Assembly (NCBI RefSeq): GCF_902459465.1 | Contig: NC_047079.1 | Coordinates: 186,001 to 250,000 of the forward strand | Direction of reading: 5' to 3' | Length of the DNA: 64,000 nt | From: Asterias rubens | Lineage: Eukaryota | Shown here: piece by piece, positions 2,608 to 41,534 of the stretch | Position numbering within the stretch: the stretch's first letter is position 1 | Layout: the number at the start of each line of letters is the position of its first letter | Made by a program: the position numbers and the translations under genes | The notes under the pieces: model-generated | What the model saw: only the letters and a program-made list of their open reading frames with translations | The model's database searches: none | Told to the model about the DNA's origin: nothing

Positions 2608-5600
2608 TTAGAGATCTTCATGTGACTGTTGGTTCTGATGCTGTTTGTTCCTCAATTCATTCTCTCGGTCTACTGTATTCCTGTTTTCTGTTGTAATTGT
2701 TTCCATTTCTAAAATTGAAAAAAGAGAACAAAATAAAAAATAAAGTTTCATAGGGTTTATAACAGATATTTACAAAGAATATAATGTGAAAATATTTAAC
2801 AGAAATTGTTAATTCTGAAATTGCCTGTGGTTGATCAATGTTGACGCACCATTTAAAACATGTTGCCTTTTAGGGTTGAACTAAAATTTAGCATTGATTG
2901 ATAAAAACTAAATTCATTCCAATCCTCCACTTTCAATAAACAACCTCCAATAACCTGTAACAGTTTCATAAAGTCTAGGTGAAAACAAAACTGCGTTTCT
3001 GTTGAGCTGTACACATTCAATAGCAATATTGTTCTAGAGGGTCATTGAATCTTGTTTTTCTACAGTGAGTACATTGTACAAAAATGTACATGTACTTCTG
3101 GGGATTGGTCGGAGGGCCCACTATTAATCCACTATTAACCACCATGCGCCCCTGCACCATTGATATCCCGATAGTGGAGTTTGTGTGCAGTACTGACCAG
3201 ATACAGATGCTCTGGTATAACTTTATATTTAGATCAACTTTCTCTTTTTACTAATTGCCAAATCCTTGACTCGACTTCACAATGAAGAAATAAATAAATT
3301 ATAATAATTTTGGAGGCTAATCATCCTTCCTAGCAGCTCACAGCTGAATTGTGAAGGACACGGCTACAACGTGTTTGAGAAGCAGGCATGGGCGCCTTTG
3401 GCAGCAAGCTACATCAACTATTATGTGATCCAAAGTGTTTGATTTTTCCAGTGAGCCAAAAATGCTCTTAGAACAACTTCCAATCTAACACCCTTTTCAG
3501 ACAGGCCTTCAGAGTCGTGCTGAACCAAATTAGTAACTAAGTACATCAAAAGTTTGGCGTCAGAAACATGTAGGAGCGACTGGACGAGCTAGAAGTCAAA
3601 AGATTCTGGGTCGATCAAGAGTTGCTCTTAGTCTCTTTGCTGTAATGTGCAGCATTGAACATGGTGTGTGATTTTTAAACAAGTTATTAATGCTTACCGG
3701 CTGAGGCTGACTTTAAGGATGATTTTAAGCTCTTTCTGAACATAAGCAGTACTTTCTCTATGTTGGCGTCCACTTCCTTTCTTGAAACAATATTATCATT
3801 TCCACTGTCCAAAATTGAGTACACCTTTAACAAACAGGGATAGAAAGCAATATCTTTATCAAAGGAATTCTCCTTGTATGAACCATAGCTCAAGATTCAC
3901 TAGGCAGTTTATAAAGGCATATTATGACCAAGGTGAGAGGGCCTTAAGGCAAACGTTATATATTAAATAAACAAGTATTGAATGAAGAACATTAATGTTA
4001 GAATTAACATGCAGCTCGTTTCCTTCAGGGATAAGGTAGACTGGTGATGAAAAAACTGAACTATGAGCACAAAGCTCATGAGTTGGACTTTTGTTCTAAT
4101 GTTTAGAAAAAACAATAGACTATTAAAGGCAGTGGACACTAATGGTAATTACTCAAAATAATTATCAGCATACCTTTCTTGGTGACGAGTAATGGGTACA
4201 GGCTGATGGTATTAAACATTGTGAGAAACGGCTCCCTCTGAAGTGCCATAGTTTTTGAGAAAGAAGTAATTTTCCACGAATTTGATTTCAATCTCGAAAT
4301 CAACCATCTAAACGCACACAACTTCGTGTGACAAGGGTGTTTTTTTCTTTCATTATTATCTCGCAACTTCGATGACCGATTGAGCTCAAATTTTCACAGG
4401 TTTGGTATTTGATGCATATGTTGAGATACACCAACTGTGAAGGCTAGTCTTTGACAACTACCAATAGTGTCCACTGCCTTTAAACTTAAAATGCACCTGG
4501 CATTGATCAAGTGACATTTTTCAGGTATGTTTTTTTATTTGGGAACAAAGTTTGTTTTTAATCACTGAACACCTTATATTAAAACCTCTGAAGGATCAAT
4601 TAATTTAGATTTATTAATTTGTAATCAGAGTTAACAAAATATAACCACAAATATGTTTTGTTTCTTAAGGAAGAGGCCTGCTTGGAAATATTTTATGACT
4701 CAACAGAGTAGATACAAAGTGAAAGAAATGAATTGAATAACCTAATTTTATCTTATTACCTGTATTCCTCCCTTTTTGGAGCCACCATACTCCTGGTATA
4801 ACGTCAAAAAGTCTGCCTTATACAGTTCACCATTAGAATGAGCTTCAGCTTCATGCATACATGTAAGTAAGAAATCCCTGTCAGGAAACACAAAGACATA
4901 AGAGAGTTAGTCACATTGAATGCTAAGTTCCCTGAACCAGTCATTAACACCCTACACAGTAACCATGGAGGATCTACCTCCATGCAGTAACTGCTCCAAT
5001 TTAGACCCGATTATAAATTTCCAATGTGTGGTTCAGAGTTTTCAAATATTAGATAGATTTTGGAGTGAATATTTGTGATGACCACCGCAGCGCAAATTGC
5101 GCAACCAGACTGATCATGAAGAGAGAGATTTTTTTGGGGTTGGCAATATAATTCAAACAGCGATGCGAAGTAATCATACGTTTAACTTTACACCAATATA
5201 ATGTATCTAAGTTGTCAACTAAGCTTTGGTCCATTGGCTCTTCCAGTTCAGCGGTTGTGTACATGTACCCGATCTTTACTATCGCACAAGGTCAATGTGG
5301 GTCAGCTTTTTCACCTTAAAGACATTGGACACTATTGGTAATTGTCAACGACCAGTCTTCTCACTTGGTGTATCTCAACAGATGCATAAAATAACAAACC
5401 TGTGAAAATTTGAGCTCAATTGGTCATCGATTGGTCATCATGACATCATCAAGTCTTTGTCGTCTTGATATTTAGGTTTGTATGTCTGATGAGTTTCAAT
5501 GTTCAATTCATTTTCAATCTTGATTTGTGCTGCACTAAACCTAAAAAAATACTTTTTGAAGGAAAACAAAGGCAATGTTTGACCCAGGGTAATTACAACA

Positions 5601-8600
5601 CGGATTAAACTAAGATCATACAATTTTGACATTAACTTTTTTAAATGTTGCCCCTGTCTTGATCTGTCATATTGCCCCATTATGAACATCAAAGCTTTCA
5701 CATTCAATGAGATACAGCAAACAGTTCTTAATGAATCAAACATTAGGCAAGTTGGTGTGTTAAACACTACATGTACCTTATTTCATCTGGAGTGAAGCTA
5801 AAAAACTCATGGTCCTCTGTATTTCCGCTATCTCCGTCCAAAATATTAGCCAAGGTTGTCAACGTTTTCAAAGACAGAGCATTAAGCTCTTTATCACAGA
5901 CTAGTTTGCCATCCTGGTTGGCGTCTAATATATCCATCAGCTAAGAAAAACAATAAATTGAATACAATCCGTTGAATAGACCTGTATCATGCTGCCTCAA
6001 TCTTGGTCATGTTCCTCGCATGCTTAGCTTATAAATCATCTTGTAATTAGGAACCAGACTGTTTTGTTCTTTTAGCCTCGGTTTGGTAACATTAATATCA
6101 ACGAGAGAAATTCAAGATGGCTGCACCATGATAAAGGTCTAATGTGCAAGTTCCTTGTGTCTGAAATGTGTTCACTGATCATGACTGATTGACTGATTGA
6201 AATTTGCGATTAATCAACTAACCTTCAATAAAAAGAACTTAAGTTTATTCAAAAACACCATCTTCCACCTCACAAGAATAACCAGTGTGCTTCGGAGGAC
6301 ACATAAACTCACAAAACTCTTTGCAACACAAAGCAGCAGGCTGGCATTCAAGTTTGTGTGTGTGTTTAGTGGTCATGGTGGTAGTCATCCACACGCCACA
6401 CCTTTGATTAGATGGAGGATTGTCATTCACAGTCAACTGGATCAATGAGTCCCTGTAATCATGGTTTGTTTGCCTCCATTAAAAGGCACTGCAAACAATA
6501 CGACTCTTTGCATGGATTTGTGTTTTTATTCTATTTTTGCTTTGATTAAAGACCCATTTCTTTCAACCAACCAAGGTTTTGTTAAGAAGGATAACTGCAT
6601 TGTACCCAGGGCTTTTTGTTCTCTCTCTGTTTGCAGATAATTGGCCAGAAACATGACTGTAAACATGATATGAGCCCACTCAATCTGTAATGTCTACGAG
6701 GGAACATCTTTTTATCCAAAAATTCAATTTAATTCAATTTATTTATTTCATCACAGATTACAAGTAAAAGGTTCCAGTGACAAAGCAAATGTTTAATGGC
6801 TAGAGGTTTTTTTCCAACTGATGAAAGCAATCCAGCATTAGTACAGGAAAATGGATGTATAATCCATAAGGCATGTAAGGGAACAGGGAAACATGCAGAA
6901 AGGCTAAGAATTCATTAGAGATCATGGCTTGATTTTTTTAATTGAAAAACATGGTGCAAGGTAAACAAGGAATACTTAAATGTAAAGGTACATGTACCTA
7001 CCTTGTTTACAATATTTTCAAGACTTTCTTTTATATTTATTTCCTTCAGAACATCTTCATCAAAGTGTTGGGAAATCACAGTAGTTTCCTGAAACTTGTT
7101 TTCTCCACCAAAGTCCAATCCAAATTCCTGATAACAAATATTTTAAAAATCTTTATAAAACACATCACCTTCTGACAAGCCAATTGAAAATCTGTACCAT
7201 CCGTACAAAACACTGGTTTCAGGGTTCTTTGGCCATTGTTCAGCGCTTGAATAGTAATGAAATCACTAAGTATGTGCAATCTCCATGGTGCAATAGACCT
7301 TTATCAAGCAGTCACCATCTTGGTCATGTTCCCCGTTTCCAACAGTAATGAATGTAGCATTCATTGCGCAAACATGGCACCAGACTATTATTTCGACCAG
7401 CCTCAGTTTGGTTACAATAAGTCGGAAGGGAGTAAAATCAAGATGGCCACACCGTGATAAAGGTCTATTGCGTTACAGTACCTAGCACGCCAGGCGAAGA
7501 TTCCTCAGAGCCGAGTGAATCACCCCGAGCTGGGTTGATAGAGGAGCCTGACGAGCAAGCAAACCCACAGCTGGCGGGACCAGAATGGGGCTATGAGAGG
7601 ACACTGTAGTCTTCCTGCTCGATCTTGATCAGCAAGGATGAGTGAGATGGGCGTGAACGTATAGGCCATCCCACTGCACTGATTTAGCATCGATCTTCCA
7701 CATGTTAGGTTTGGGCTCCTTGGACAGTAGATCCGCAGCTGGTTGTTCACATGTTCACTATGCTTCATAGGCAGGCCTGAGACTGGCAAGGTGACACATT
7801 TGCCCTCTCATCCCTTTTTGGGTATGGCCCCTGTACTAGACAATCTCTTAGCCTTAGGCGATTCACTATTCAGTTGGCTGGACCCAAAAACACTTACCGA
7901 AGACAAAGGGACTGTAGGACACAAGAAGTAATTCATTGTATGTAGGGAACAACACATTTGTAGTATTCACTCAACAGGTTAGTAGAGTGAAGTAGCCCAT
8001 TCAATCTATTTTTGACAGATTTTCAAAAGCAATAAAGTAACACAATTACCTCAAGAAGACTTTCCATCAAACTGCTGTGGTCCAGCATTCCCTGCAAGTG
8101 ACACCACTCAATCAATGTCTCACTGTCATGATATTGATACAGATACAAAACAAATTACCAATGTTCAACCCCCCAAAAAGATAATCTATTAGTAAGGAGG
8201 AGTAATTGTGCTAAATTGCTATAAATGCCATCAAAATCAAAATTCTGTATGGCATTATGCACACAATTTTGTCTACAATAATACAGACAGTACTGGGCCC
8301 AATTTCATGGCTTTGCTTTAGTAGGCAAAGAATCGGTGCTTTAACGCATGTAAAAGAACCCAAGGTGCTCTTATCGAAAAGAGAAGGGGTTTGCCCCGAT
8401 GTTCCTGGCTGTGGCTGCTAATGGGATGTAGCGCCTTGTAAACCCTCATAAGGTGCTACATAATTGGGTTTCAAAAGTCTTTACATTTCAATAACCTCTC
8501 TTTCTGTATTAATGTATATTTATACTAAGCGCCTTGAGTACCTTGTTGGTAGATAATGCGCTACATAAGATATTATTATTATTGTTATTATTAAACTCAC

Positions 8601-10826
8601 TTAAGCTCATAAGGATCTGTATCACCCATTGTCTGATCTTCATATCCATCATATGTAAACACCATATTAATTTCAGTCAGAGGGATAAAGTCTTGGCTTT
8701 TGTCATTGCAGTCACTCAAATCAACATCACTCAGTCGTGAAAACAAAACCGAGACAGCCATGTTTCTTGTTCCATATGAGCGCACCTGATGCCAATAACC
8801 TACATCACAAAAAGATAATTTTCACAAGGATTAATTACAATGAATTCAATGGAAATAAAATATAGATGCACTTTCAGCCTTATTGGGGTTTTTTTCTTTT
8901 CTTTTTTTCCCCAATACTGTCAAGGTTTTAGACAACATTGTAGGCCTAGTTATTAATTGTTCGGTTTAACCCATACACACCGATATGTGTGTTAGCACAG
9001 TACTTTCCAGAGTTCTGTGAACAAAATCACAGACATATTACTCGAATGGGATTCGAACCCACAACCTTTGCAATTCTAGAGCAGTGTCTTACCAACTAGA
9101 CATTGTAGTTGTCTATAAAACATCATGCCCCAAAACACTACATTTTTTAAAATTAAGTAAGAAATAATCTAAGGTCTGTTTGAGAATGTAAAATAAACAA
9201 ATTTGCAAAATAATTTCTCGAAATACTCCACTTCGATATCTGAAAGGCATTTGTTTTGAAACTATAAACCCAAATCTTGCTACGTGTAGTAACATGTAAT
9301 TAGTAATAATACACAGAAAATGAAAAAATCCACCCCATAGAATATGGTAGAGGTCAAGAATGTCTTAAAAAACATAGCATTACAAGGCAGCACTCTGTTC
9401 ATTTTCAGTAGAATACACAGGCAGCATAAAATACTAATAATAGTTTTTGTTTTACGTACCATAGGGGAGGTATAGGCAATCACCAGCAGTAAGATTGGCA
9501 TATGTCCAGTCCACATCAGCAAAAGAGGGGTACTTATCCAGATCAACATTGTCAGGATCCAAGAGTGCAAAACCCCCATAAGCTTCAACTTCTTCCTGCA
9601 ATAAATATAAATTGAGTTAATTGTGTATAGTTTATAATTGTGTATAGTTTATAACAGTCAAAAACAGGTTTTCCAACAGTTTGTGTAATAACGAGTTTCA
9701 CATAACAGCTAACAAAAAGACATACCGAAAATTCACTGCCAGAGTTCAGGGCCACAGAGTTACATGCACATGGGAGGGGGAGCTGAACTGTGAAGAGCAA
9801 TGCATTTCAAATATGCTAGGATATAATGCCACACTCAATGCAGAGAGGTTACCGCAGTACACTGTCAACGCTTTTCAAGTCAATTGTGGGGGTGTGGTAC
9901 TGAGCACAAACAGTATTGAGGCAATTTTTTGTTTTTTATGGGATTGTTTTTGGGAAGTGGACTTTTATAGGGGGCAGTGATTAAAAACATCCGCCACAAG
10001 TGCAAAAAATCATGTCATCCAAAGAAGTGGTTTTAAATTGCACATTCAACACAAAATTCCTGAAATCATGCAAAACAAATTTTATGTAATGCTTTTTTGT
10101 GAAGATACAACACTGCTGAGTTCTAGATTTGTGTATAATAAATATCACTGTACATTTCCTTAAATGCTTTATTTTTGTTACGTACCTTACCTTAGCGATT
10201 GGGATGTGATCTTCAAAGGAGGGGTGGATGAAGATCCAGTCCTTTGTTCCAGCATAGAGACAATTGATGGCATTGTCTGCATCTCTATGCAGTAGACTCT
10301 TTGTGCCACCGCTACTCATCCACAAATTAGCCTCCAGAATCCGTTTGACAAAGGTACCACAGGTGAGAAAAGGTAGCACGGAGACCCCAGATGCCATTGG
10401 CTGAGGAAGTTGAGAGACGATGTATGCATTCCTTGACTGATAACTCCTTAAAAAACTGGCGATGGTATCCTGCCCAAGCCCTTTCACTCCAGTTGGAATG
10501 TTCTCTTTTTCAGATTTTGACTCGATCTTTACCTTCAAATCCCCAAAATTGTCCATTAAATAATCATCCGTCCAAAGATGCATCCCTTTTGACAGGTGGG
10601 CTGCTCCTCTAAAAATGACTGGCTTTCGTTGAGCTGCATAGTTCTCCCAGAACTCTCTTGAGGATGGAATCCCTTCAAGTATCTCTATGTGACCAATGGG
10701 GTCTTTATGTTTGCCAAGTTGCATCCCATGACCTTGCAAAAACTTTGTATCAGCACAAGGAATTAAGAACATTAGTAATATTCTTGTAAATAAAGTTACA
10801 CTCGACTGTGATGGATGCATCTTCAT
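2608..10826 (-). CDS. JmjC (cupin-8-like) 2-oxoglutarate/Fe(II) oxygenase with N-terminal signal peptide, C-terminal EF-hand-like loops and C-terminal HEDL; ~559 aa, 9 coding exons
   Basis: Exons (minus) 10826-10191, 9595-9460, 8799-8601, 8122-8050, 7127-7002, 5940-5777, 4877-4760, 3824-3698, 2708-2608. All junctions are GT-AG with phases 0,1,2,0,0,2,0,1 and total 1680 nt in frame. Motifs: KPVIFRGAA; LWMSSGGTKSLLHRDADNAINCLYAGTKDW (H-x-D plus Lys); GDCLYLPYGYWHQVRS (distal His). Hydrophobic N-terminus VTLFTRILLMFLIPC. Loops DANQDGKLVCDKE and DSGNDNIVSRKE. Ends QQSHEDL*. Confidence 0.85.
4127..4479. mobile_element. MITE family A, complete
   Basis: TTAA|AGGCAGTGGACACTA...TAGTGTCCACTGCCT|TTAA. 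Confidence 0.9.
5977..6141. mobile_element. Short MITE (TIR ATAGACCTTTATCA-like); second copy 7293-7468
   Basis: Both copies start atagacc, contain atcttggtcatgttcc and caagatggc, and end gataaaggtcta. Confidence 0.7.
7480..7935 (-). mobile_element. Degenerate DIRS-like (tyrosine-recombinase retrotransposon) pol C-terminal fragment
   Basis: GC-richer island. Minus-strand frames give NNQLRIYC, KIDAKSVQWDGLY, PISLIL and PLIAPFWSRQLW..LLVRLL, resembling the DIRS1 pol tail (N-x-QL-x-x-YC...DAL...W...YAFPP...LIAPxWPRQxW). Stops and frameshifts present. Confidence 0.5.
8345..8592 (+). mobile_element. SINE/LINE-type 3' segment with (TAT)n tail; inverted relative at ~21675-21790
   Basis: Shared agcgccttgagtacc...gtt(g)gtagata..tgcgcta.ataaga followed by a TAT repeat. 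Confidence 0.6.
8965..9101 (-). mobile_element. tRNA-derived SINE; other copies 25500-25655 (+), 25433-25489 (-, partial), 58975-59120 (-)
   Basis: A-box-like TAGTTGGTAAGA and B box GGTTCGAATCCC followed by a shared non-tRNA body (acatgcctgtgat...cacaggactcgggaaagtactg). Confidence 0.8.
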
Positions 10827-11599
10827 TCTTAAGGAAGCCATTGTTCAATTCTTCATGATCAGTCTCACATTTCTGTTTGAAAAAAATAAAAGATTGAAAT
10901 ACATCATTTGTTTGTAATTCTTCTTTTTCTTTCCCCCTGCAAATGTATGTTTTAAACATTTAAACTTCAAACAAACATCCATGCCTACAGCTAGATCTTA
11001 AATGAAGACACTGCTATAATTTCAACATTAGGGGTTTACAAATTACATTAAAGTTTAGTATGAGAACAAATCATAACTCATGAAATTATACTTTGGATTT
11101 TTACAATCAATAAACATAAAAGATCTCTCCTGTAAGAAAGTACCAAGTGATGATTCATGGTGTTCTCAAAATATCTTCTAAAAGCTAGCGTGATACACCA
11201 TCATTACCAAACTAATCCAAGATGTTAGTGTGCTGACTCTTACGAGTTTGGCTGTAATCAATTAAAGACACTGGACACATTTTCCTTTTGTCAAAGAAAA
11301 GTCTTCTCACTTAGTGACATATTCACAAATAATAACAAACCTGCGAAAATTTGAACTCAGATACAACACATATCTTGTTCAATTGTTACAAATTTCAAAT
11401 CTTAACTTTTTTTAACAAAATTATTTGATGCTTTATTACGGAATGGTCATTTTAACAGTAACTTGATTTTGAAATTACTGTAGGCCCTCTGTTGTTTTTT
11501 TATCTCTTCTGCAACTATTGCAGATGAGAGCCTCTCCCGAAAGCTTAAAGCCTTCGTGAAAGACTCAATAAAAATTTAAACGTCTGGCCACAAATTAGC

Positions 11600-14237: not shown

Positions 14238-17200
14238 ATGAGTAAACGAGTCAGCACAACAGCTACAGCCAGATTGAAGCAAGATTACATGAGAATAAAG
14301 AAAGATCCAGTGCCTTATGTTACAGCTTCACCACTCTCATCAAATATACTTGAATGGTAAGCAAAGTCATGCCACAAATTGATGCATGGATTTTAAAGGC
14401 AGTGGACACTATTGGTAATTGTCAAAGACTAGCCCTCACAGTTGGTGTATCTCAACATATGCATAAAATAACTAACCTGTGAAAATTTGAGCACAATCGG
14501 TCATCGGAGTTGCGAGATAATGAAGAAAGAAAAACACACCTTTGTACGTGTAACACGAAGTTGTGTGCGGTTAGATGGTTGATTTCGAGACCTCAAGTTC
14601 TAAATCTGAGGTCTCAAAATCAAAGTTGTGGAAAATTTATACTTCTTTCTCGAAAACTATGGCACTTCAGATGGAGCCGTTTCTCACAATGTTTTATACT
14701 ACCAAACTTTCCCTATTACCCATTACCAAGCAAGGTTTTTTTTTTATGCTAATAATTATTTTGAGTAATTACCAATGGTGTCCACTGCCTTTAATCTCTA
14801 TCAGCACTCCTCCATGAGTTCAAATCATATAAAAATTACATAAAAGACAACTTAAACATTTGGCTTGCAGGTAGACTAAACCATAATACAGTGACAGATT
14901 CTCAACTAATATCTTCTTAGCAGAATAAGTTTCTAGAAACACTTTTGTTATGAAATGCCATTGTAACTTATCACTACCGCATCCCATATCCAACCAGGCC
15001 TGGAGTCTAGTTGAATATAGAATACCGATAGACTAAAAATGTTTCCGATATACACAAGCTTGCATGTTGACTAAATGTTTCCGATATCCACAAGCTTGCA
15101 TGTAAAAACAAATTTATCTTTAAGCAAACTTGATTCATAGTTTAGAATAGGTGATTAAACAGGATTTGATATGGGCTGTAGGTTCATATAAGACTATTGT
15201 TACTATGACTCCCGTCCTCTACTTACATCTCTCCACACTGGCTCTCCGTAAAAGAAAGAGTTCTCTTCAAAGTACTTTTGTTTGTTTTTAAAGCCTTCCT
15301 GACCAGACGCCATTTTATATATCAAGGATTGCTTTACATTTCATAACCCATTCCTAGGACCCGAAGCAAATCTGGCAATCGCACATTCACTGTAACTGCA
15401 TCCACAGAATGGAACAACATCCCTTCTTTCATTAAAGCCACTAAATCCACAGACCAATTAAAAAAACTTCTGAAAACACATCTCTTCCCTGTTTAAGCTT
15501 CTCTCTTTTTCTCATTCTTTTCAAACATTGTGTTTGTAGATTTTCAATAAGATTTTGTTGTTTATTGTGCATTTTCAGTTTTTGTAAGCGCTGTGTTATA
15601 GTTTTCTAAGGGGAGTGTTTCTAAATACCTGTTGTTATTCTTATTCTTATTATGGATCATCCAATTAGAATCAAGGATTTGAGTTTGCTTAAAGATGCTG
15701 AATGGCAGTCACTGAAGCATACTGAATGATGCATTGTACATAGCTGATAGTGCTTTATGAAGACATAGACAAATTCCCGGTATTGTGATTTGTTCATCTT
15801 AGTGTTGAATAATTGATTATGATATTCCAGGCATTATGTGGTAAGAGGACCAGAAGGAACACCTTATGAAGGAGGGCTTTATCATGGCAAACTAGTCTTC
15901 CCAAGAGAATTCCCATTTAAACCTCCAAGTATCTACATGATAACACCCAATGGAAGATTCAAGTGTAACACAAGGTTAGTCAATTATTCACCAAATTAAC
16001 AATCCTATAGTTTCACATAATGCCAAGATTCCTCAATGTCTCCAATTGTCGGTTTTCCTGTCATTGTATTTGAATAGTTCATCAGTGCCACAGATTTTCA
16101 CTGCAGAACTTAACCAAGGTTGAGAACATTATCTCTCCCAACAGTGATTGGAATTCTATTGTAATTAAGCACAGCTGGTGCTGCGACAGTTTACCGTTCT
16201 CTTTGAAGCACTTTGTGCAATGGCTCTACTATCTATATTACTATTAGCGTGTGTGACACTGTGGTATATTAAGGTATGGGTTGGCGTTAGAAACATGCTG
16301 ATAGATCACGCACAAGAATTATTGCTTATTGTTATTGATTTTATACATCATCAGGGAACACTGGATTGGGTGTGGTTTCAATCTGACAGATTCAATCTGA
16401 GAAAAAGACCTGTACTTGTTGGTAATAGACTGATCCATTAAGCACAACCCATTTGCACAACCAAAAGTCCGCCACTATAAAGTCCGACATGCGCTTGGTG
16501 TGCTGTTAATTGACTGAGCAGAAGGTGTGGTCCATAAACAGCAGCCAGCCACCAGTCAAGGTCATTACCTCACAGTGATGAACCAGATTATCACACCAAC
16601 TACCCGCATGCTGGTGTGACTTTGTTCGGCGACCTTAACCACCTTGAAACCAGTCAGATTTGCTGTGGGAATGGGCTGTCCCAAGTGGTGAACCAACCTA
16701 CACGTAAAGACGCAATCCTTGACCAAATCATCACCAACCTGGCATGTTACTACAATGTCCCTGAAATATGTTCCCCGGTTGGCACCGTAAGCGACCATTC
16801 TTCAGTTCTTTGGTCGCCTCTGAACAGCACCCTCACAAAGATCAACACAACGCGATCCCGAGTTGTACGACCTATGAGAGACTCAGACATCAGAGCGTTT
16901 GGAGTTTGGATTGTGGATCATGACTGGCCAGAAGTTCATGGACAAACAAGTGCTACCGAGAAATGTGATGCGTTTTATGACACCTTGCAATCCAAAATAG
17001 ACCACTACTTCCCTACAAAAACCATGACACTCCATAGTACCGACAAACCTTGGATGACCACCTACGTCAAACGTCTTATCCGGAAGCGCCAACACGTTTT
17101 CCACCACGAGCATCGTTCTTGCAAATGGAAACGACTACAAAACAAGGTCCGTCGTGAAATCGCCAAGGCCAAAGAAGAACATTTCAAAACGAGAGTCCAA

Positions 17201-19161
17201 TGACACAAAAAAGCTAACCCAGCAGAGTGGTATAAGCAGATTAAACTCATGGCTAACTTGAACAACTCTCAATCATGTATACAACCTCCTCCAGGCGTTG
17301 ACTCCCAAGATTTTCAAGCCATTGCTAGCGGTATTAACGACACCTTTGCTTCGGTTGCTAAAGATCTGGAAGCCCTTGACACTTCTCAACTCCCTGTGTA
17401 TCGACCTGATCAACATCCCTGTCCCATTGTTCAGGACTACGAAGTTTACGACATGTTGAGGAAGACAAAGCCAGGGAAAGCCCCTGGACCTGATGGTATA
17501 TCTGCACGGTTAATCAGAGAGTTCGCGTACGAACTTAGCAAACCCCTCTCGAGCATCCTCAATCAATCCTACCATGAAGGTATTGTCCCACCTCGATGGA
17601 AGAGAGCTGTGGTCGTCCCTATTCCCAAATCTAAACCAGCGACTTGGGACAAGTTAAGACCAATATCCCTGACTGACCACTTTGCGAAAGTTGCGGAAGG
17701 CTTCATGGCTAAGTGGCTGCGCAAGGACTTGGATAAATCTATAGACCCCAACCAGTACGGTAATTGTAGGGGAGTCTCTACCACTCATTACCTGGCGAAA
17801 CTTATGGACACTTTGCTCATGAATTCTGATAAGCCTGGTCACGTAAGCTCTGTTGTTATCACTGATTTTAGCAAGGCATTCGATCTAGTTGACCATAATG
17901 TTCTCCTGAGAAAACTCATCTCCCTCGACGTTCGGCCATCGGTTGTTACGTGGGTTGCCAGTTTTCTCACCGAAAGAGAACAATGTGTTCGCTACCAAGG
18001 TGAAACCAGCGATTGGATCAAGTTAAATGGTGGAGTACCCCAAGGCACTCGCATTGGCCCACTTGGTTTTGTAACCATGGTGAATGATGCAGCCTCTGAT
18101 ACCTCCCTTACATCCCTGAAGTACGTTGATGATCTAACCTTGATTGAGACAAGAGCGCATAAAGAACCATCTGTCATGCAAGATCATCTGGATGAACTTG
18201 AGAACTGGGCCGCAGTGAACCATATGAAACTTAATCCTGAGAAATGTGCTTCCATGCAAGTATCTTTCATGAAACACAGCCCCGTTCAAAATTGCCAATG
18301 TTACTTAATACAGACTGTGGAAGTTGCACAAATTCTAGGTGTTCACATACGGTCTGATTTAAAATGGGATAGTCAGATTGCAGAAATGCTTAAAAAGGCT
18401 AATGGCAGATTGTATCTACTGAAACTTCTTAAGCGCTTCAAATTGCCAATGGATGATCTTATCACCATCTTCTCTGGTTTCGTACGTCCCCTGGCAGAAT
18501 ATGCTGCCCCTGTGTGGCATCCTGGTCTTACTGCCAAGGAGAGCGCTGCACTGGAACGAGTTCAGAGAAGGGCTTGTAGGATCATCCTTGGCAATCAGTA
18601 CACACAGTATGATGAGGCACTTGAACTCTGTAAGTTATCCACATTGTTTGATAGACGAGAACAGCTTTGCCTTAATTTCTTCAAATCACTAATGAAATCA
18701 GAGCGTTTCCATAGTTGGGTCCCTCCAAAGAAGAGTACCATCCACAATAGAGACCTAAGGAACTCAAACAAACTGTCCGTTCCTAGATGTAGAACAACTC
18801 GCTGTCAGAAAAACCCTCTCATATAATGGCTAATTTGTGGAACAACAGTTCTGTTTGACTTTGATTTTTTTTTTTTTTTTTCCCATCCGGACCCCATAGT
18901 TCTCCAGCCTGTGCTTATGACTCATGGCTTGTTGTATTTTGTTACCTGGTTCGATTCGTACAATATTAATTGTTTTTTTATTGCATTCCGTTTTATAAAG
19001 CTCTTTTGGTCTTGTTTGTGTTGCAGAGTTCTTGTTAAATGCTGTATTTGTTTAGTCCAAGTGTGTACATGCGTTTTTGTTCCTTTTTGTGTGTGCTGGT
19101 GAGGTGTGTGGTTTGCTGTTTAATTTTATTCCCCTTTTTGCTTGTGTATTTTATATTATTA

Positions 19162-38167: not shown

Positions 38168-41100
38168 TCAAGGACTCTTGCCATCCATATTCTTCATAAA
38201 TTCCTTAAAGTTCATCCATTCAAACTCAGTCATGACTTTATTCAGGGCATATATTTCAAGCCTCTGTCGTTGCTTTAATGCCACTGCCTGATCTCGCTGG
38301 AGTTGCTGTTCTGTCTTTCGTGCTTCATCCCTTTGTTGCTGAACTTTCTTTTTTACCTTCTCCTCCATACCCGAGAGCCGCTCACGGACAGTTCGCTGAC
38401 TCTGAAAATAAAATACCAGCCAGTAATTATAATATTTATATTAAAATTAAACATCAGAGTTATGTAGAGGATTGTAAAACAGATCAAAGCTTGTTTGATA
38501 ACCTTGTATAAAAGAAAAGAAAACCTTTCCCAGGTCATCAATAAAAAATTAAAAAATAACTGTGTAAAGAAGTGAAGAAGAATGCATTACATAATTAGTA
38601 ATGGTAATGAATGAATACAAAAACTTAAGTTTGGTTGTCAATCTAAAAGTAGTAAACTTTATAAACTGGGAATGATGTCCAAATACTTCCGGCGAGAATC
38701 TTTTTTTAAATTTCATCGATATCCAGTTTCTCGTTTCATTTTGTCAAGTAGAAGCTTTATGCTCAAATGAAACAACAAATTGGACACAATAAGGCAATTT
38801 TAATAAATACACTATGTCATCTGAGATTGCCTGGAACTGGTTGTCTGTAAGTTGCAACATGTGACATGTACTTTAAGATTTCTTGCAAATGTGACCAATG
38901 ACCTGTATATGTCACAAGTTGGTTGGATTGTGTTTTTATTATACTTGATTGATGACAACTTCTCAAGGTTTGCTAGTTCCGTTTGAAGTACCGAACATGA
39001 TTAAATATTCCAGTCTCACTTGAAACAAAACATTGTTGTTTAGTAAAGTAAATTTGTTTTGATAATATTACATGAATCTTCATTTAATCTCCATTCATAA
39101 ATACCTCAGACAGTTTCGCTATTCCTATTGGTGGAGAGCGCGTCACGTGGGTGTGTATAAACATTTGTTAATGACCAGTAAAAAGTGTTGAAACATGGGC
39201 GTGACACGCGAGCTTGCACCTGTGCTAATAAGACAGTTTCTTTTTTATTCCTATTGGTCGAGAGCAATGGCCGGGACAGTTGTATCACATCATGAGATAC
39301 TCGCGACGAGCACAGCATTCCCTTATAAGGAGTTGTTTACCCGAGGGCCTAACCATTTCTCAGCTGGAGGGGTGTTGTGTTGAAAGAAATCATTGAAAAA
39401 TTATAATTTTTGCATTTATTTTACCTTTTGATGTTTTTTGACCAAAAAGGTATGAATGGGAATCAAAGTGTGTTGAATCGGTTTTTAACTAGTGGTTTAA
39501 ACCTGCCGAGGCCTGGTTCTTGATAATTTACTTCAACTTTGTCTTAGTAAAATTATCAAGAATCAGGCCTTGTTGGGTTTAAACCACTAGTTGAAAACCT
39601 CTTTACCACACATTGATTCCCTTATTATAAAAAGTTTCTCAATGTAAAAAAGAAAAACCAGTACCTACCCTTAGGTCTGTCATTGATGGAATGTACTGAT
39701 AATTCTGTAACATCTGAGGGGTTGGAGTACCAGGGGGAGCACAAGGTAGAATACATCCAAGCTCCCGAAGGTTACCAGACTGCTTCTCAGACAGGAATAC
39801 CTTAGTAACCTTTGACACGTCGTCCCTTCCTCTATGATGACCTGCATGAAGTCCTCCACCTACTCCTGGTATTCTAGGAGATACTCTACTGCCATACATA
39901 ACTGGATCATGTTCAACAGTTTCTAGAAGTTTTGACCCAATTGTCTCAGATGATATTTTATTGAATGAGTTTATTATTTTCATGTTGTAGTCCTTTTCTT
40001 CTTTGTTGGGTTTGACAGTCTTTTTGTTCTCTGAATCACATTTGTTATATCTGGAGCTGTAAATCTCAACCTTCTTAGGTTCAACAACTACAGGCACAGT
40101 GAGTAGCAATGAACCAATTGAGTTGTCTTGTAGAGGACCTCCTCTATTCTGGGGAGCCTGAGACCCACTTGGATGCTTTGCATCATGAGAATGTCTGTGA
40201 GTTGACTGACTCCTGGATTTGGCTCTGGATTGTCTTTTCTTTTTCTTTGTTGTTTTTTTCTTACGAAGTTTTGAAGAAACAGGATGATCTGTTGATGAGT
40301 AAATTGGAAAGATCCTGGTTTTAAATCATAGACACTGGATGAATGTTACAAAGGAAGAGCAATTCAAAGTATCGTTGACCCTGTGAGGGCATGTTTTAAC
40401 TGTGATGCAAAATGTTTTAAACTAGACAAATATATATGCTTTAGCAATGCAAAGTTATGAGTTTGAATTCCAGCCGAATGATAATTCACAGAACTTGGGA
40501 AAGTACAGTGCTTACCTGGTAGTACACATCAGTGCAAGGGTAATAACAAATTATAAATTTTATACTTTATTGTATGGTAATTTTTCAGGGTGAGTGATAT
40601 TGGTATAAAAGGGATTCTGAAAGTAACGAACGAGGCGAGCCACATCACATCTGAATGGGCAAGAGAAAAACTTACCAATGTGAGATTGTGAGATATAAAA
40701 AATGTTGAGCAAAAAGATTAAATAAATGTTTTCACACATTTCTAGTATGAAATTAATGTATGAGGAACATAGTATTTCAGTTATTTTGATACAATTAATA
40801 CAAATAATAATTATTGTAAACATTTCAAAACAGAGATTTGGTTTACCTGCAACATAAACTTGTATCATTTCATCGGAACGAGCACGATTTTGTTCTTCTC
40901 TGTCTCCAACTGAATTCCCTGGCAATATGGAATTAAAACCAGCTGGAACCTGGGTATCCACCAAGCTTTTATTACATGTTATATGATGATCACAGAGTCT
41001 TGGTTGGTCATTCTCCACCGAGTGCAATGGAGCAACAAGTTCTCTACTGTTAGTCATTGTACTGCTGGATGATTTACCACTTAAAGTTGCTGGACTTTTT

Positions 41101-41534
41101 GTCTTACTGCTTTGAGTCAGACCAAATGCCCTGGTCTTTGCACTTCGTGATAATTTATGAAGAGCTCGAAAGTTTGGAAACATGCTGTTCCTCAATGCTT
41201 GATGCTGAAAGCTCCCAACAAATGTCTCATCGCTTTGTTTTTCTGCAACTTTCTGTGTTTGCAGGAGTAAAGGAGTGTCAGATGACACAAAGGACCGCTG
41301 GCTTGGACTGATTGGTATTTCAGGTAAAGAACATGTGCGGCTGTGGCTGGGTGATGTCTTCCTGCCTTCATTCTGAACTTTCTTGTATATCACAGATGCA
41401 GACGTACTGGTATTGTGTCTTGGGATTGAAGCGGATATAAGCCTTGTTGTAGTAGCTTGACGACTGCTTGATGCACTGCCATAACATGCCACAGATTCAA
41501 TCATCATAGGACGGCTACACAATGTCAGGGACAT
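38168..41534 (-). CDS. Long Ser/Lys-rich, probably disordered protein (~513 aa) with C-terminal small vasohibin-binding protein (SVBP/CCDC23)-like domain
   Basis: Exons 41534-40847, 40288-39669, 38401-38168 (688+620+234 = 1542 nt, phases 1 and 0). The last exon encodes LKQRQRLEIYALNKVMTEFEWMNFKEFMKNM, versus human SVBP [31 protein letters not shown] (recalled). The exon 2 acceptor (caacag|AT at 40288) was chosen to keep frame. Confidence 0.75.
39093..39623 (+). mobile_element. Interspersed element with asymmetric inverted repeat and long 3' palindrome (Helentron/DINE-like); other copies 30146-30515 and ~37470-37938
   Basis: The 5' ATTCATAAATACC is mirrored by a subterminal GGTATTTATGAA in the 30146 and 37470 copies (degenerate here), followed by a ~150-bp imperfect palindrome at ~39458-39621. 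Confidence 0.65.

What the first reader, a model, noticed from the sequence alone, without database searches (positions are those of the whole stretch)
2608..10826. Putative ER-luminal JmjC oxygenase with intact HxD...H triad, EF-hand-like loops and a KDEL-like HEDL tail
Seen in sequence: a 9-exon phase-consistent model with a hydrophobic N-terminus, JmjC core HRD...WH plus the 2-OG-binding Lys (GTKDW), two or three EF-hand-like loops (DANQDGKLVCDKE, EAHSNGELYKAD, DSGNDNIVSRKE), and a last exon not in the ORF track (2708-2608) ending HEDL*. Established: JmjC hydroxylases (FIH, JMJD5, JMJD7) are mostly cytosolic or nuclear; JMJD8 is the known luminal member; P4HTM is a luminal 2-OG dioxygenase with EF-hands but not a JmjC. 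Inference: a Ca2+-responsive protein hydroxylase of the secretory pathway, with no vertebrate counterpart of this architecture that I recognise. HEDL does not fit the strict PROSITE ER_TARGET pattern, so retention is uncertain.
Basis: partly seen in the sequence, partly recalled or inferred. Interest (0 to 1): 0.72.

Follow-up and report, generated by a model that had tools for sequence, protein, structure and literature searches.

The report
ER-lumen JmjC oxygenase with EF-hands
This sea-star gene encodes an oxygen-dependent JmjC enzyme with a secretion signal, a calmodulin-like tail domain and an ER-retention-type ending, and it belongs to an old, unstudied animal gene family that was not found in vertebrates.

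Summary
The 9-exon minus-strand model is real. Every intron is GT-AG and the frame is kept. The 564-aa product is letter-for-letter RefSeq XP_033642564.1, "uncharacterized protein LOC117302684" of Asterias rubens. Spliced transcript contigs from independent studies join the C-terminal exons exactly as predicted.

The N-terminal 330 residues are a Cupin_8/JmjC domain with intact Fe and 2-oxoglutarate residues: H185, D187, H266 and K200. Its closest solved folds are JMJD5 and JMJD7.

ER-lumen residence is supported mainly by comparison across the family:
- 157 of 175 full-length relatives have a hydrophobic N-terminus.
- 151 of 175 end in a KDEL-like tail.
- Four cysteines are invariant; three of them align to L, V and I in cytosolic JMJD5 (the fourth is not covered by that alignment).
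- HEDL resembles the tails of known human ER residents (QEDL, REDL, KEDL).

The C-terminal 200 residues fold as two EF-hand-pair lobes, and orthologues pass Pfam EF-hand thresholds. The Asterias protein itself gets no EF-hand hit, and none of its loops is canonical, so Ca2+ control is unproven.

The family has at least three old paralogue clades, in placozoans, sponges, cnidarians, spiralians and non-vertebrate deuterostomes. No vertebrate member and no paper on it were found. It differs from JMJD8, which has HxH and no EF domain or tail. Verdict: a new architectural variant of JmjC hydroxylases; its substrate is unknown.

The parts
10191..10841 (-). Exon 1 (aa 1-217): start codon, signal-type N-terminus (h-region aa 15-28 = 10758-10799), conserved GH..LG.H motif (10707-10736), first half of the JmjC barrel with H185-R-D187 (10281-10289), K200 in GTKDW (10236-10250), and invariant C161 and C194
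   Evidence: ORF and sequence. Cupin_8 E 2.1e-14 on this exon alone. Alignment to JMJD5 puts H185/D187/K200 opposite the corresponding His, Asp and Lys of JMJD5.
9460..9595 (-). Exon 2 (aa 218-263): middle of the barrel, N251-L-T sequon, invariant C257
   Evidence: Cupin_8 E 2.3e-06 on this exon alone. GT-AG and phase. The sequon is kept in 29 of 58 relatives.
8601..8799 (-). Exon 3 (aa 263-329): distal Fe ligand H266 in YWHQV (8783-8797), invariant C293, end of the catalytic domain
   Evidence: H266 is invariant in alignment A2.
8050..8122 (-). Exon 4 (aa 329-353): linker and first helix-loop-helix of the C-terminal domain
   Evidence: The acceptor at 8122 restores the frame. The junction sequence ELNETLIEWC continues as in orthologues. 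The spliced transcript contig covers place 8091.
7002..7127 (-). Exon 5 (aa 354-395): poorly conserved acidic linker and the entering helix of EF-like motif 1
   Evidence: Transcript contigs X1 record 1 and X13 record 14 lie on 7002-7126 and continue directly into exon 6.
5777..5940 (-). Exon 6 (aa 396-450): EF-like loop 1 DANQDGKLVCDKE (5887-5925) and the family's best-conserved C-terminal motif D-x-D-x-x-N-T-E-x-x-E (5803-5838)
   Evidence: Contig pieces 5776-5940. Loop alignment. N and E of the motif are kept in 90% or more of relatives.
4760..4877 (-). Exon 7 (aa 450-489): EF-like loop 2 EAHSNGELYKAD (4811-4846), in a segment longest in echinoderms and canonical-looking only in sea stars
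   Evidence: Contig pieces 4758-4876. Loop alignment.
3698..3824 (-). Exon 8 (aa 490-532): EF-like loop 3 DSGNDNIVSRKE (3774-3809), the position where 12 of 58 relatives have a canonical Ca2+ loop
   Evidence: Contig pieces 3698-3822. PS00018 matches at this column in relatives but not here.
2608..2708 (-). Exon 9 (aa 532-564 plus stop): low-confidence terminal helix and the HEDL tail (2611-2622), stop TAA 2608-2610
   Evidence: Phase-1 acceptor. Identical to the RefSeq protein. Contig depth arithmetic ends at 2708, and RNA reads of the sister species cover 2681. KDEL-like tails in 151 of 175 relatives.

Best explanation
LOC117302684 of Asterias rubens most likely encodes a soluble Fe(II)- and 2-oxoglutarate-dependent JmjC hydroxylase of the early secretory pathway. 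A cleavable signal peptide would take it into the ER. Two probable disulfides and N-glycans fit a luminal fold. The C-terminal HEDL would be read by the KDEL receptor, which returns escaped protein from the Golgi. In the lumen the JMJD5/JMJD7-like barrel would hydroxylate a side chain of an unknown secretory or membrane protein, most likely at C-3 of a basic or polar residue as in its nearest relatives. The C-terminal 200 residues form a calmodulin-like domain of two EF-hand-pair lobes docked on the barrel. In this species the domain probably acts mainly as a structural or substrate-recognition module; Ca2+ binding is at best weak.

Shown: the gene model, its transcription, the catalytic residues, the folds, and the family-wide signal-plus-tail signature. 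[quoted passage not shown]
For: Gene and transcript:
- The model equals RefSeq XP_033642564.1.
- Spliced contigs from separate studies join exons 5 to 8 and cover exons 4 and 9.

Catalytic domain:
- Cupin_8 E 2.1e-32.
- The family profile hits JMJD5 at E 1.9e-28.
- The AF2 model has pLDDT 88.8 and pTM 0.85.
- Foldseek against PDB gives JMJD7 at E 3.8e-18, and JMJD5 at target TM 0.82-0.85 with rmsd about 2.8 A.
- H185, D187, K200 and H266 align to the Fe and 2OG residues of JMJD5. They are invariant or nearly so in 49-58 relatives.

Luminal signature:
- The N-terminus has R5 and K7 followed by a 14-residue hydrophobic core, and there is no other hydrophobic segment.
- Of 175 full-length relatives, 157 have a hydrophobic N-terminus, 151 end in [KRHQSAP]x[ED][LF], and 98 fit strict PROSITE.
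- C161, C194, C257 and C293 are invariant. The first three align to L, V and I in cytosolic JMJD5.
- Sequons are conserved at two columns.
- Human ER proteins end in QEDL, REDL, KEDL and RTDL (PMC2140024).

C-terminal domain:
- 18 of 42 relatives hit Pfam EF-hand families.
- The family profile hits NCS-1.
- All 50 best Foldseek PDB rows are EF-hand proteins.
- VIA-align gives Z 6.0-6.3 for each lobe separately, including the EF-hands of ER-resident FKBP14.
Against: - No signal-peptide predictor was available. The cleavage site is guessed from the -3/-1 rule, so an uncleaved anchor, as proposed for JMJD8, is not excluded.
- HEDL fails strict PROSITE ER_TARGET, and Asp at -2 gave only partial retention in a reporter.
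- EF-hand evidence for this species is fold-level only. There is no Pfam EF-hand hit and no canonical loop. Foldseek E-values are 3.6e-3 or worse, and the Z values are in a range the tool calls common for helical models.
- Disulfide geometry and the domain interface could not be inspected, because model coordinates are not exposed.
- No activity, substrate or localisation data exist for any member.
Confidence: 0.7

Rival explanations
1. One reading: the EF-hand domain binds luminal Ca2+ and switches or tunes the hydroxylase, so that activity follows the filling of the ER Ca2+ store.
For: - An EF-hand-pair fold docked on the barrel: full-length pTM 0.85 and EF-hand matches.
- Canonical PS00018 loops at the last EF position in 12 relatives and at the first in 2.
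- The Patiria and Acanthaster orthologues pass Pfam EF-hand cut-offs.
- Precedent: P4H-TM, an ER 2OG dioxygenase whose EF domain binds Ca2+ with Kd 23 uM near the active site (PMC7948501).
Against: - In Asterias rubens no loop is canonical and Pfam finds no EF-hand.
- 44 of 58 relatives have no canonical loop at all. The conserved function of the domain therefore cannot depend on canonical Ca2+ sites.
- The best-conserved C-terminal motif (D-P-A-N-T-E-E-x-E) lies between the loops, not in them.
Confidence: 0.25
2. The protein is mainly secreted, or resident in the Golgi or extracellular matrix, rather than ER-retained. HEDL would be too weak a signal, and the enzyme would act on extracellular or late-secretory substrates.
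For: - In a reporter, Asp at -2 (AKDDL) left only more than 20% of cells with ER localisation, and QEDL alone gave mostly Golgi localisation (PMC2140024).
- Sea stars, one sea cucumber and the brittle star all carry x-D-L rather than x-E-L.
Against: - The natural proteins ending QEDL, REDL, KEDL, NEDL and RTDL were all found in the ER.
- The tail is under clear selection across the family, at 151 of 175, including KDEL, RDEL and HDEL in crinoid and other orthologues of the same clade.
- An extracellular 2OG oxygenase would lack a supply of 2OG and Fe(II).
Confidence: 0.12
3. It is simply the invertebrate orthologue of JMJD8, the known ER-luminal JmjC protein, and therefore already known, possibly non-catalytic.
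For: - Both have an N-terminal signal and a JmjC-only catalytic part, and both fall in the FIH/JMJD5/JMJD7/TYW5 group (PMC5684140).
- A few spiralian members of paralogue clade C have HxH like JMJD8.
Against: - JMJD8's conserved hallmark is His in place of the Asp ligand. It ends with the JmjC domain and has no EF domain or KDEL tail. Here Asp187 is invariant in 58 relatives.
- JMJD8 is not among the 30 best Swiss-Prot models or the 30 best AFDB clusters, while JMJD5, JMJD7, TYW5 and FIH are.
- No vertebrate sequence is among the 120 best profile hits, although amphioxus and tunicate orthologues score E 1e-143 to 1e-92.
- A JMJD8 sequence could not be obtained for a direct alignment or tree.
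Confidence: 0.06
4. The model fuses two genes, or the last exon is wrong, so the EF-like exons or HEDL do not belong to the JmjC protein.
For: - The 3698-to-2708 joint was not among the printed rows of the read table.
- The C-terminal exons carry no Pfam hit of their own.
Against: - A single 2161-nt contig carries exons 5-8 at record positions 1219-1752. That leaves exactly 1059 nt of exons 1-4 plus a 159-nt leader before them, and 409 nt after them.
- In X13 the depth in bin 2655-2854 equals the contig depth times 54/200, so coverage ends at 2708.
- The RefSeq protein is identical.
- The same architecture is found in more than 100 orthologues.
Confidence: 0.02

Closest known systems
JMJD5 / KDM8 (human; arginyl C-3 hydroxylase; PDB 6f4m, 4gjy and others)
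   Same: Best sequence and fold match of the catalytic domain. Profile E 1.9e-28, target TM 0.82-0.85 with rmsd about 2.8 A over about 245 residues. The H-x-D, Lys at +15 and distal His align residue for residue.
   Different: - Only 22-24% identical.
- JMJD5 is nuclear or cytosolic, with no signal peptide, no KDEL tail and no EF domain.
- Three of the family's four invariant cysteines are L, V and I in JMJD5.
- The substrate is not transferable.
JMJD7 (human, mouse, Drosophila; lysyl C-3 hydroxylase; PDB 5nfn, 4qu2, 7yxg)
   Same: Top Foldseek E-value, 3.8e-18. The N-terminal region before the barrel also aligns.
   Different: 17-21% identical. JMJD7 is cytosolic, with C-terminal dimerisation helices where this protein has the EF-hand domain.
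JMJD8 (vertebrate ER-luminal JmjC-only protein)
   Same: It is the only JmjC protein shown to sit in the ER lumen. It has an N-terminal signal, is N-glycosylated, and belongs to the same broad JmjC-only group (PMC5684140).
   Different: JMJD8 has HxH instead of HxD and is suspected to be inactive. It has no C-terminal domain and no KDEL-type tail, and is thought to be held by an uncleaved signal. It is not among the best structural matches here.
P4H-TM (ER transmembrane prolyl 4-hydroxylase with an EF domain)
   Same: A 2OG dioxygenase working in the ER lumen with an EF-hand pair packed near the catalytic domain. It works as an analogue (PMC7948501).
   Different: - Prolyl-4-hydroxylase type barrel, not JmjC/Cupin_8.
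- Membrane-anchored, with no KDEL tail.
- One EF pair inserted inside the catalytic domain rather than four EF-like motifs appended at the C-terminus.
- That paper states EF motifs are found in no other characterised 2OG dioxygenase.
Soluble ER EF-hand residents with HDEL-type tails (FKBP14/FKBP22, CREC proteins such as reticulocalbin and calumenin)
   Same: Signal peptide plus low-affinity EF-hand pairs plus an H/K/R-x-E-L/F tail. The FKBP14 EF-hands are a top match of the first lobe, Z 6.3. The HDEF tails seen in some relatives are also calumenin's, which I state from my own knowledge.
   Different: Those proteins carry no oxygenase. Here the EF loops are mostly degenerate.

Membership tests
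JmjC / Cupin_8 Fe(II)- and 2OG-dependent oxygenases | Significant match to the Cupin_8/JmjC profile | tested here: met
   PF13621 E 2.1e-32, 113.5 bits against a cut-off of 27.4, residues 62-284. Also met on exons 1 and 2 separately.
JmjC / Cupin_8 Fe(II)- and 2OG-dependent oxygenases | HxD/E...H metal triad | tested here: met
   H185, D187 and H266 align to the ligands of JMJD5. They are invariant or present in 90% or more of 49-58 relatives.
JmjC / Cupin_8 Fe(II)- and 2OG-dependent oxygenases | Basic residue binding the 2OG C-5 carboxylate, 15 residues after the first His as in FIH and JMJD5 | tested here: met
   K200 is at H185+15 and aligns to the JMJD5 lysine. It is present in 90% or more of relatives.
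JmjC / Cupin_8 Fe(II)- and 2OG-dependent oxygenases | Double-stranded beta-helix fold | tested here: met
   AF2 pLDDT above 95 over most of residues 41-290. Foldseek probability 1.00 to JMJD5, JMJD7, TYW5 and FIH.
JmjC / Cupin_8 Fe(II)- and 2OG-dependent oxygenases | 2OG turnover or substrate hydroxylation | not testable with these tools
   Needs recombinant protein.
EF-hand Ca2+-binding domain | Match of this protein to an EF-hand profile | tested here: not met
   No EF-hand family listed for P0255 at E up to 10, nor for its C-terminal 242 residues at E up to 0.01.
EF-hand Ca2+-binding domain | Homology of the domain to EF-hands, judged through relatives | tested here: met
   18 of 42 aligned C-terminal domains hit EF-hand_6, 15 hit EF-hand_7 (best E 4.3e-11) and 12 hit EF-hand_1. 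The Patiria and Acanthaster orthologues are above the cut-offs. The family profile hits NCS-1 at E 1.5e-6.
EF-hand Ca2+-binding domain | Canonical 12-residue loop with ligands at positions 1, 3, 5 and 12 (PROSITE PS00018) | tested here: not met
   No match in P0255. Only 14 of 58 relatives have one. In loop 1 the Glu is at position 13, loop 2 begins E-x-H, and loop 3 has G at position 3.
EF-hand Ca2+-binding domain | Paired helix-loop-helix fold | tested here: inconclusive
   All 50 best Foldseek rows are EF-hand proteins, but E is 3.6e-3 to 3.6e-2. Each lobe reaches Z 6.0-6.3 at rmsd 2.6-4 A over 60-80 residues, a range the tool warns is common for helical models.
Soluble ER residents retrieved by the KDEL receptor | N-terminal signal peptide | tested here: inconclusive
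   R5 and K7, then the hydrophobic core at aa 15-28, then C-A-D. There is no other hydrophobic segment. 157 of 175 relatives have a hydrophobic N-terminus. No SignalP-type predictor was available.
Soluble ER residents retrieved by the KDEL receptor | C-terminal tetrapeptide fitting PROSITE ER_TARGET [KRHQSA]-[DENQ]-E-L | tested here: not met
   HEDL has D at position -2. 98 of 175 relatives do fit the pattern.
Soluble ER residents retrieved by the KDEL receptor | Tail within the experimentally widened KDEL code | tested here: inconclusive
   HEDL itself was not tested in PMC2140024. QEDL (ERp57), REDL (GPX7), KEDL, NEDL and RTDL (MANF) proteins were ER-located, while D at -2 was weaker in the reporter. 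151 of 175 relatives end in [KRHQSAP]x[ED][LF].
JMJD8 | His replacing the acidic metal ligand (HxH), conserved among JMJD8s | tested here: not met
   H-R-D here, and D187 is invariant in 58 relatives. The JMJD8 feature is from PMC5684140.
JMJD8 | JmjC-only architecture ending with the JmjC domain | tested here: not met
   A conserved extension of about 235 residues follows the barrel.
JMJD8 | Closest relative by sequence, fold or tree | tested here: inconclusive
   JMJD8 is absent from the 30 best Swiss-Prot and 30 best AFDB-cluster matches. No JMJD8 sequence could be placed in a tree here.
P4H-TM | Prolyl 4-hydroxylase-type catalytic domain and an N-terminal transmembrane anchor | tested here: not met
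   The catalytic domain is Cupin_8/JmjC. The only hydrophobic segment is signal-like and the tail is that of a soluble resident.

The most novel reading that the evidence does not exclude
This gene represents an undescribed, pre-bilaterian family of catalytically competent JmjC hydroxylases resident in the ER lumen and fused to a calmodulin-like four-EF-hand domain. It would install a so-far unknown hydroxylation on secretory-pathway proteins under the control of luminal Ca2+. The family was lost in vertebrates, which would keep only the degenerate JMJD8 in that compartment.
Probability: 0.25. Interest if true: 0.75.

Novelty: new variant of a known kind. Interest (0 to 1): 0.58.

Why it matters
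Known protein hydroxylation in the ER is carried out by prolyl, lysyl and aspartyl/asparaginyl hydroxylases, none of which is a JmjC enzyme. The one JmjC protein known in the lumen, JMJD8, lacks the acidic metal ligand and has no known activity.

A JmjC family with an intact active site, a signal peptide and a KDEL-type tail is conserved from placozoans and sponges to amphioxus. This implies a further ER-luminal protein modification that vertebrate-centred work has missed.

It would also be only the second fusion of a 2OG oxygenase to EF-hands, arisen independently of P4H-TM. That offers a comparison for how Ca2+ stores and oxygen- or 2OG-dependent chemistry may be coupled.

Members with canonical loops (crinoids, tunicates, sponges) and members with degenerate loops (Asterias) provide natural contrasts for experiments. 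The gene is already annotated, but only as "uncharacterized protein".

Tried and rejected
- Exon 4 acceptor. A first reading with the acceptor at 8092 gave a stop codon. The acceptor at 8123/8122 restores the frame and matches orthologues.
- Pfam on single C-terminal exons found nothing useful.
- The look-up of sequencing runs failed twice before it worked.
- In read laying the joint table was swamped by intronic high-copy repeats, so the true splice joints were not printed. Exon joining was read from the contig-piece table and from depth arithmetic instead.
- Naming short relatives that might have been JMJD8 failed: the listing of cluster members gave no names.
- The Cupin_8 loci of the sea-star genome that I fetched and that cover the first metal-ligand motif all read HxD. 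Whether Asterias has a separate JMJD8 gene stays open.
- Literature searches for JmjC with EF-hand, KDEL or signal peptide, and for the LOC identifiers, returned nothing relevant.
- ARAGORN found no tRNA in the tRNA-like intronic element.
- Earlier findings of the scan added nothing.
- The complex-prediction job was not used. A homodimer would exceed the size limit, and no binding claim is made.

Full report
**Gene model and transcripts**

The region holds a minus-strand gene of nine exons: 10841-10191, 9595-9460, 8799-8601, 8122-8050, 7127-7002, 5940-5777, 4877-4760, 3824-3698 and 2708-2608. Every intron is GT-AG and the phases fit. The coding sequence is 1695 nt and gives 564 aa ending HEDL-stop.

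The translation is identical, residue for residue, to P0255. That is RefSeq XP_033642564.1, "uncharacterized protein LOC117302684 [Asterias rubens]". The window is contig 19:186001-250000 of a 417.6-Mb assembly. The A. amurensis orthologue is 94% identical over its whole length and also ends HEDL.

The first in-frame ATG, in a good context (A at -3, G at +4), is at 10841. Position 10826 is Met6.

Transcript evidence comes from contigs of public runs laid on 2655-8654.
- A 2161-nt contig (X1 record 1) and a 1146-nt contig (X13 record 14) carry 7002-7126, 5776-5940, 4758-4876 and 3698-3822 at directly adjoining record positions. Exons 5 to 8 are therefore spliced as predicted.
- In X1, record position 1219 starts exon 5. 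That leaves 1059 nt, exactly the length of exons 1-4, plus a 159-nt leader.
- Contigs of the same depths cover place 8091 (exon 4) and place 2681 (exon 9).
- In X13 the mean depth of bin 2655-2854 is 36.9, which equals 136.5 x 54/200. That contig therefore covers exactly 2655-2708, the predicted acceptor.
- RNA-seq reads of the sister species also cover exon 9.
- The 3698|2708 joint itself was not among the printed rows, because intronic repeats fill that table.

**Catalytic domain**

- Residues 62-284 match Cupin_8 at E 2.1e-32.
- By sequence the nearest solved proteins are JMJD5 and JMJD7. A profile of 58 relatives hits JMJD5 at E 1.9e-28.
- An AlphaFold2 model of the 94%-identical A. amurensis protein, built with that alignment, has mean pLDDT 88.8 and pTM 0.85.
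- Foldseek places the model next to JMJD7 (E 3.8e-18) and JMJD5 (target TM 0.82-0.85, rmsd about 2.8 A). TYW5 and FIH follow.
- In the pairwise alignment, H185, D187, K200 and H266 stand opposite the iron and 2-oxoglutarate residues of JMJD5. All four are invariant or nearly so in the family.
- The active site is therefore intact.

**Evidence for the secretory pathway and the ER**

The N-terminus has two basic residues, then a 14-residue hydrophobic core and a short C-A-D end. No other hydrophobic segment exists. No signal-peptide predictor was available, so this is a heuristic reading.

The comparative evidence is stronger.
- Among 175 retrieved relatives of 400 aa or more, 157 have a hydrophobic N-terminus.
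- Of the same 175, 151 end in [KRHQSAP]-x-[ED]-[LF]. The commonest tails are RDEL (34), KDEL (20) and HDEL (18). Ninety-eight fit the strict PROSITE pattern.
- Four cysteines (161, 194, 257, 293) are invariant in 58 sequences. Three of them align to Leu, Val and Ile in cytosolic JMJD5. This suggests two luminal disulfides. The geometry could not be checked.
- N-glycosylation sequons are kept at two columns: ref 197 in 38 of 58 (not Asterias) and N251 in 29 of 58.

HEDL fails PROSITE because of Asp at position -2. Raykhel et al. found the human proteins ending QEDL (ERp57), REDL (GPX7), KEDL, NEDL and RTDL (MANF) in the ER. In their reporter, Asp at -2 was weaker than Glu (PMC2140024). Sea stars (HEDL, HDDL), one sea cucumber (HDDL) and the brittle star (RDDL) share this Asp.

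**C-terminal domain**

Residues of about 325-520 are helical and confidently modelled.
- All 50 best PDB matches of the isolated domain are EF-hand proteins, but with weak E-values of 3.6e-3 or worse.
- VIA-align matches each half separately to EF-hand pairs at Z 6.0-6.3, including the EF-hands of ER-resident FKBP14. The tool warns that this range is not decisive for helical models.
- Sequence homology comes through relatives. Of 42 aligned domains, 18 hit Pfam EF-hand families. The Patiria and Acanthaster orthologues pass the cut-offs. The family profile finds NCS-1.
- The Asterias rubens protein itself gets no EF-hand hit.
- None of its three loops fits the canonical pattern. Loop 1 carries its Glu one residue too late, loop 2 begins E-x-H, and loop 3 has Gly at ligand position 3.
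- Across the family only 14 of 58 sequences have a canonical loop, mostly at the last position.
- The best-conserved C-terminal element is an acidic D-P-A-N-T-E-E-x-E motif between the loops.

The domain is therefore an EF-hand-derived module. Its conserved role is probably structural or in substrate recognition. Ca2+ regulation is possible in some lineages and unproven here.

**Family and distribution**

- Exhaustive and indexed searches find hundreds of relatives.
- A quick maximum-likelihood tree of 59 named sequences gives three well-supported clades.
- Clade A holds this gene with single orthologues in placozoans, cnidarians, echinoderms, a hemichordate, amphioxus and a tunicate, in roughly species-tree order.
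- Clade B holds A. rubens LOC117291897.
- Clade C holds proteins of about 430 aa, including A. rubens LOC117301644, and the only spiralian members.
- The sea-star genome shows at least two further family-like loci.
- No vertebrate sequence is among the 61 full-length hits or the best 120 profile hits, while amphioxus and tunicate orthologues score E 1e-143 to 1e-92.

**Relation to known proteins**

- JMJD8 is the one JmjC protein shown in the ER lumen. It has HxH in place of HxD, no extra domain and no KDEL tail (PMC5684140). It is absent from the 30 best structural matches. No JMJD8 sequence could be brought in for a direct tree, so a distant common origin is not excluded.
- P4H-TM is an analogue, not a relative. 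It is an ER 2OG dioxygenase of the prolyl-hydroxylase type with an inserted Ca2+-binding EF pair. Its authors state that EF motifs occur in no other characterised 2OG dioxygenase (PMC7948501).
- Literature searches for this family or its identifiers returned nothing.

**Verdict**

The gene is already annotated, but only as uncharacterised. As a family it is a new architectural variant of the JmjC-only hydroxylases. Substrate, activity and localisation remain to be tested.

Noticed in passing
window 4369-4494 and 5305-5430 (introns 7 and 6): Two inverted copies (126 nt, 87% complementary) of a very high-copy element. Summed contig depths there run to millions, and RNA-seq reads in the thousands lie equally on both strands, with many 'opposite strands' joints. 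It is probably an abundant, transcribed SINE- or MITE-like repeat.
   Followed up: partly
window 5855-6254, 7255-7654 and 8255-8454 (introns 5, 4 and 3): Further intronic stretches with repeat-like depth, in the thousands to 1e5, in all four runs. They were not classified.
   Followed up: no
window about 9047-9130 (intron 2, minus strand): A tRNA-like stretch with a GGTTCGAATCCC box B motif was seen in the sequence. ARAGORN calls no tRNA there, so it is likely the head of a tRNA-derived SINE.
   Followed up: partly
window 16616-17203 and 17249-18826, plus strand: Two long ORFs of 195 and 525 aa. The second has the look of a reverse transcriptase of a non-LTR retrotransposon. It was not searched.
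   Followed up: no
G000 C6:22029915-22030688, C18:3162031-3162189, C11:13813729-13813857, C12:5492929-5493051: The sea-star genome holds further members of the same ER-type JmjC family. They are LOC117291897 (clade B, ends HDEL), LOC117301644 (clade C), and two more loci with family-typical motifs (H-Y-D-A-V-D-N-I-N-C; A-G-D-C-I-Y-I-P-Y). These lie beside recognisable FIH, JMJD4, JMJD5, JMJD7, TYW5 and HSPBAP1-like loci (the names are my own reading).
   Followed up: partly
C-terminal tetrapeptides of clade A orthologues: Asp at position -2 of the retrieval tail is shared by sea stars (HEDL, HDDL), Holothuria (HDDL) and Amphiura (RDDL). Sea urchins have HGEL or HTEL, and crinoids have RDEL or KDEL. 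This may say something about the tolerance of the echinoderm KDEL receptor.
   Followed up: no
window 2681 (exon 9): All 10 RNA-seq reads of the sister species (organism B) carry a 3-nt TTT insertion here, an in-frame length difference in the low-complexity tail region. Four fixed differences also lie at 5841-5908.
   Followed up: no
relatives P0126, P0155, P0156, P0188 (clade C; Macrostomum, Tubulanus, Aplysia): A few spiralian members have HxH at the metal site, as JMJD8 does, yet keep KDEL, RDEL or KEEL tails. This is either a parallel loss of the acidic ligand or a hint about the origin of JMJD8.
   Followed up: partly
Lytechinus variegatus LOC121427977 and LOC121427978 (P0198, P0007): These are two clade A copies on the same contig with consecutive gene numbers, so probably a recent duplication, perhaps in tandem. 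The second copy, as annotated, lacks the last EF motif and the tail.
   Followed up: no
window 38168-41534: Another first-stage note on this window concerns an SVBP-like motif at the end of a disordered protein of about 513 aa. ORFs at 39639-40109 and 40560-41534 on the minus strand lie there. It was not examined.
   Followed up: no
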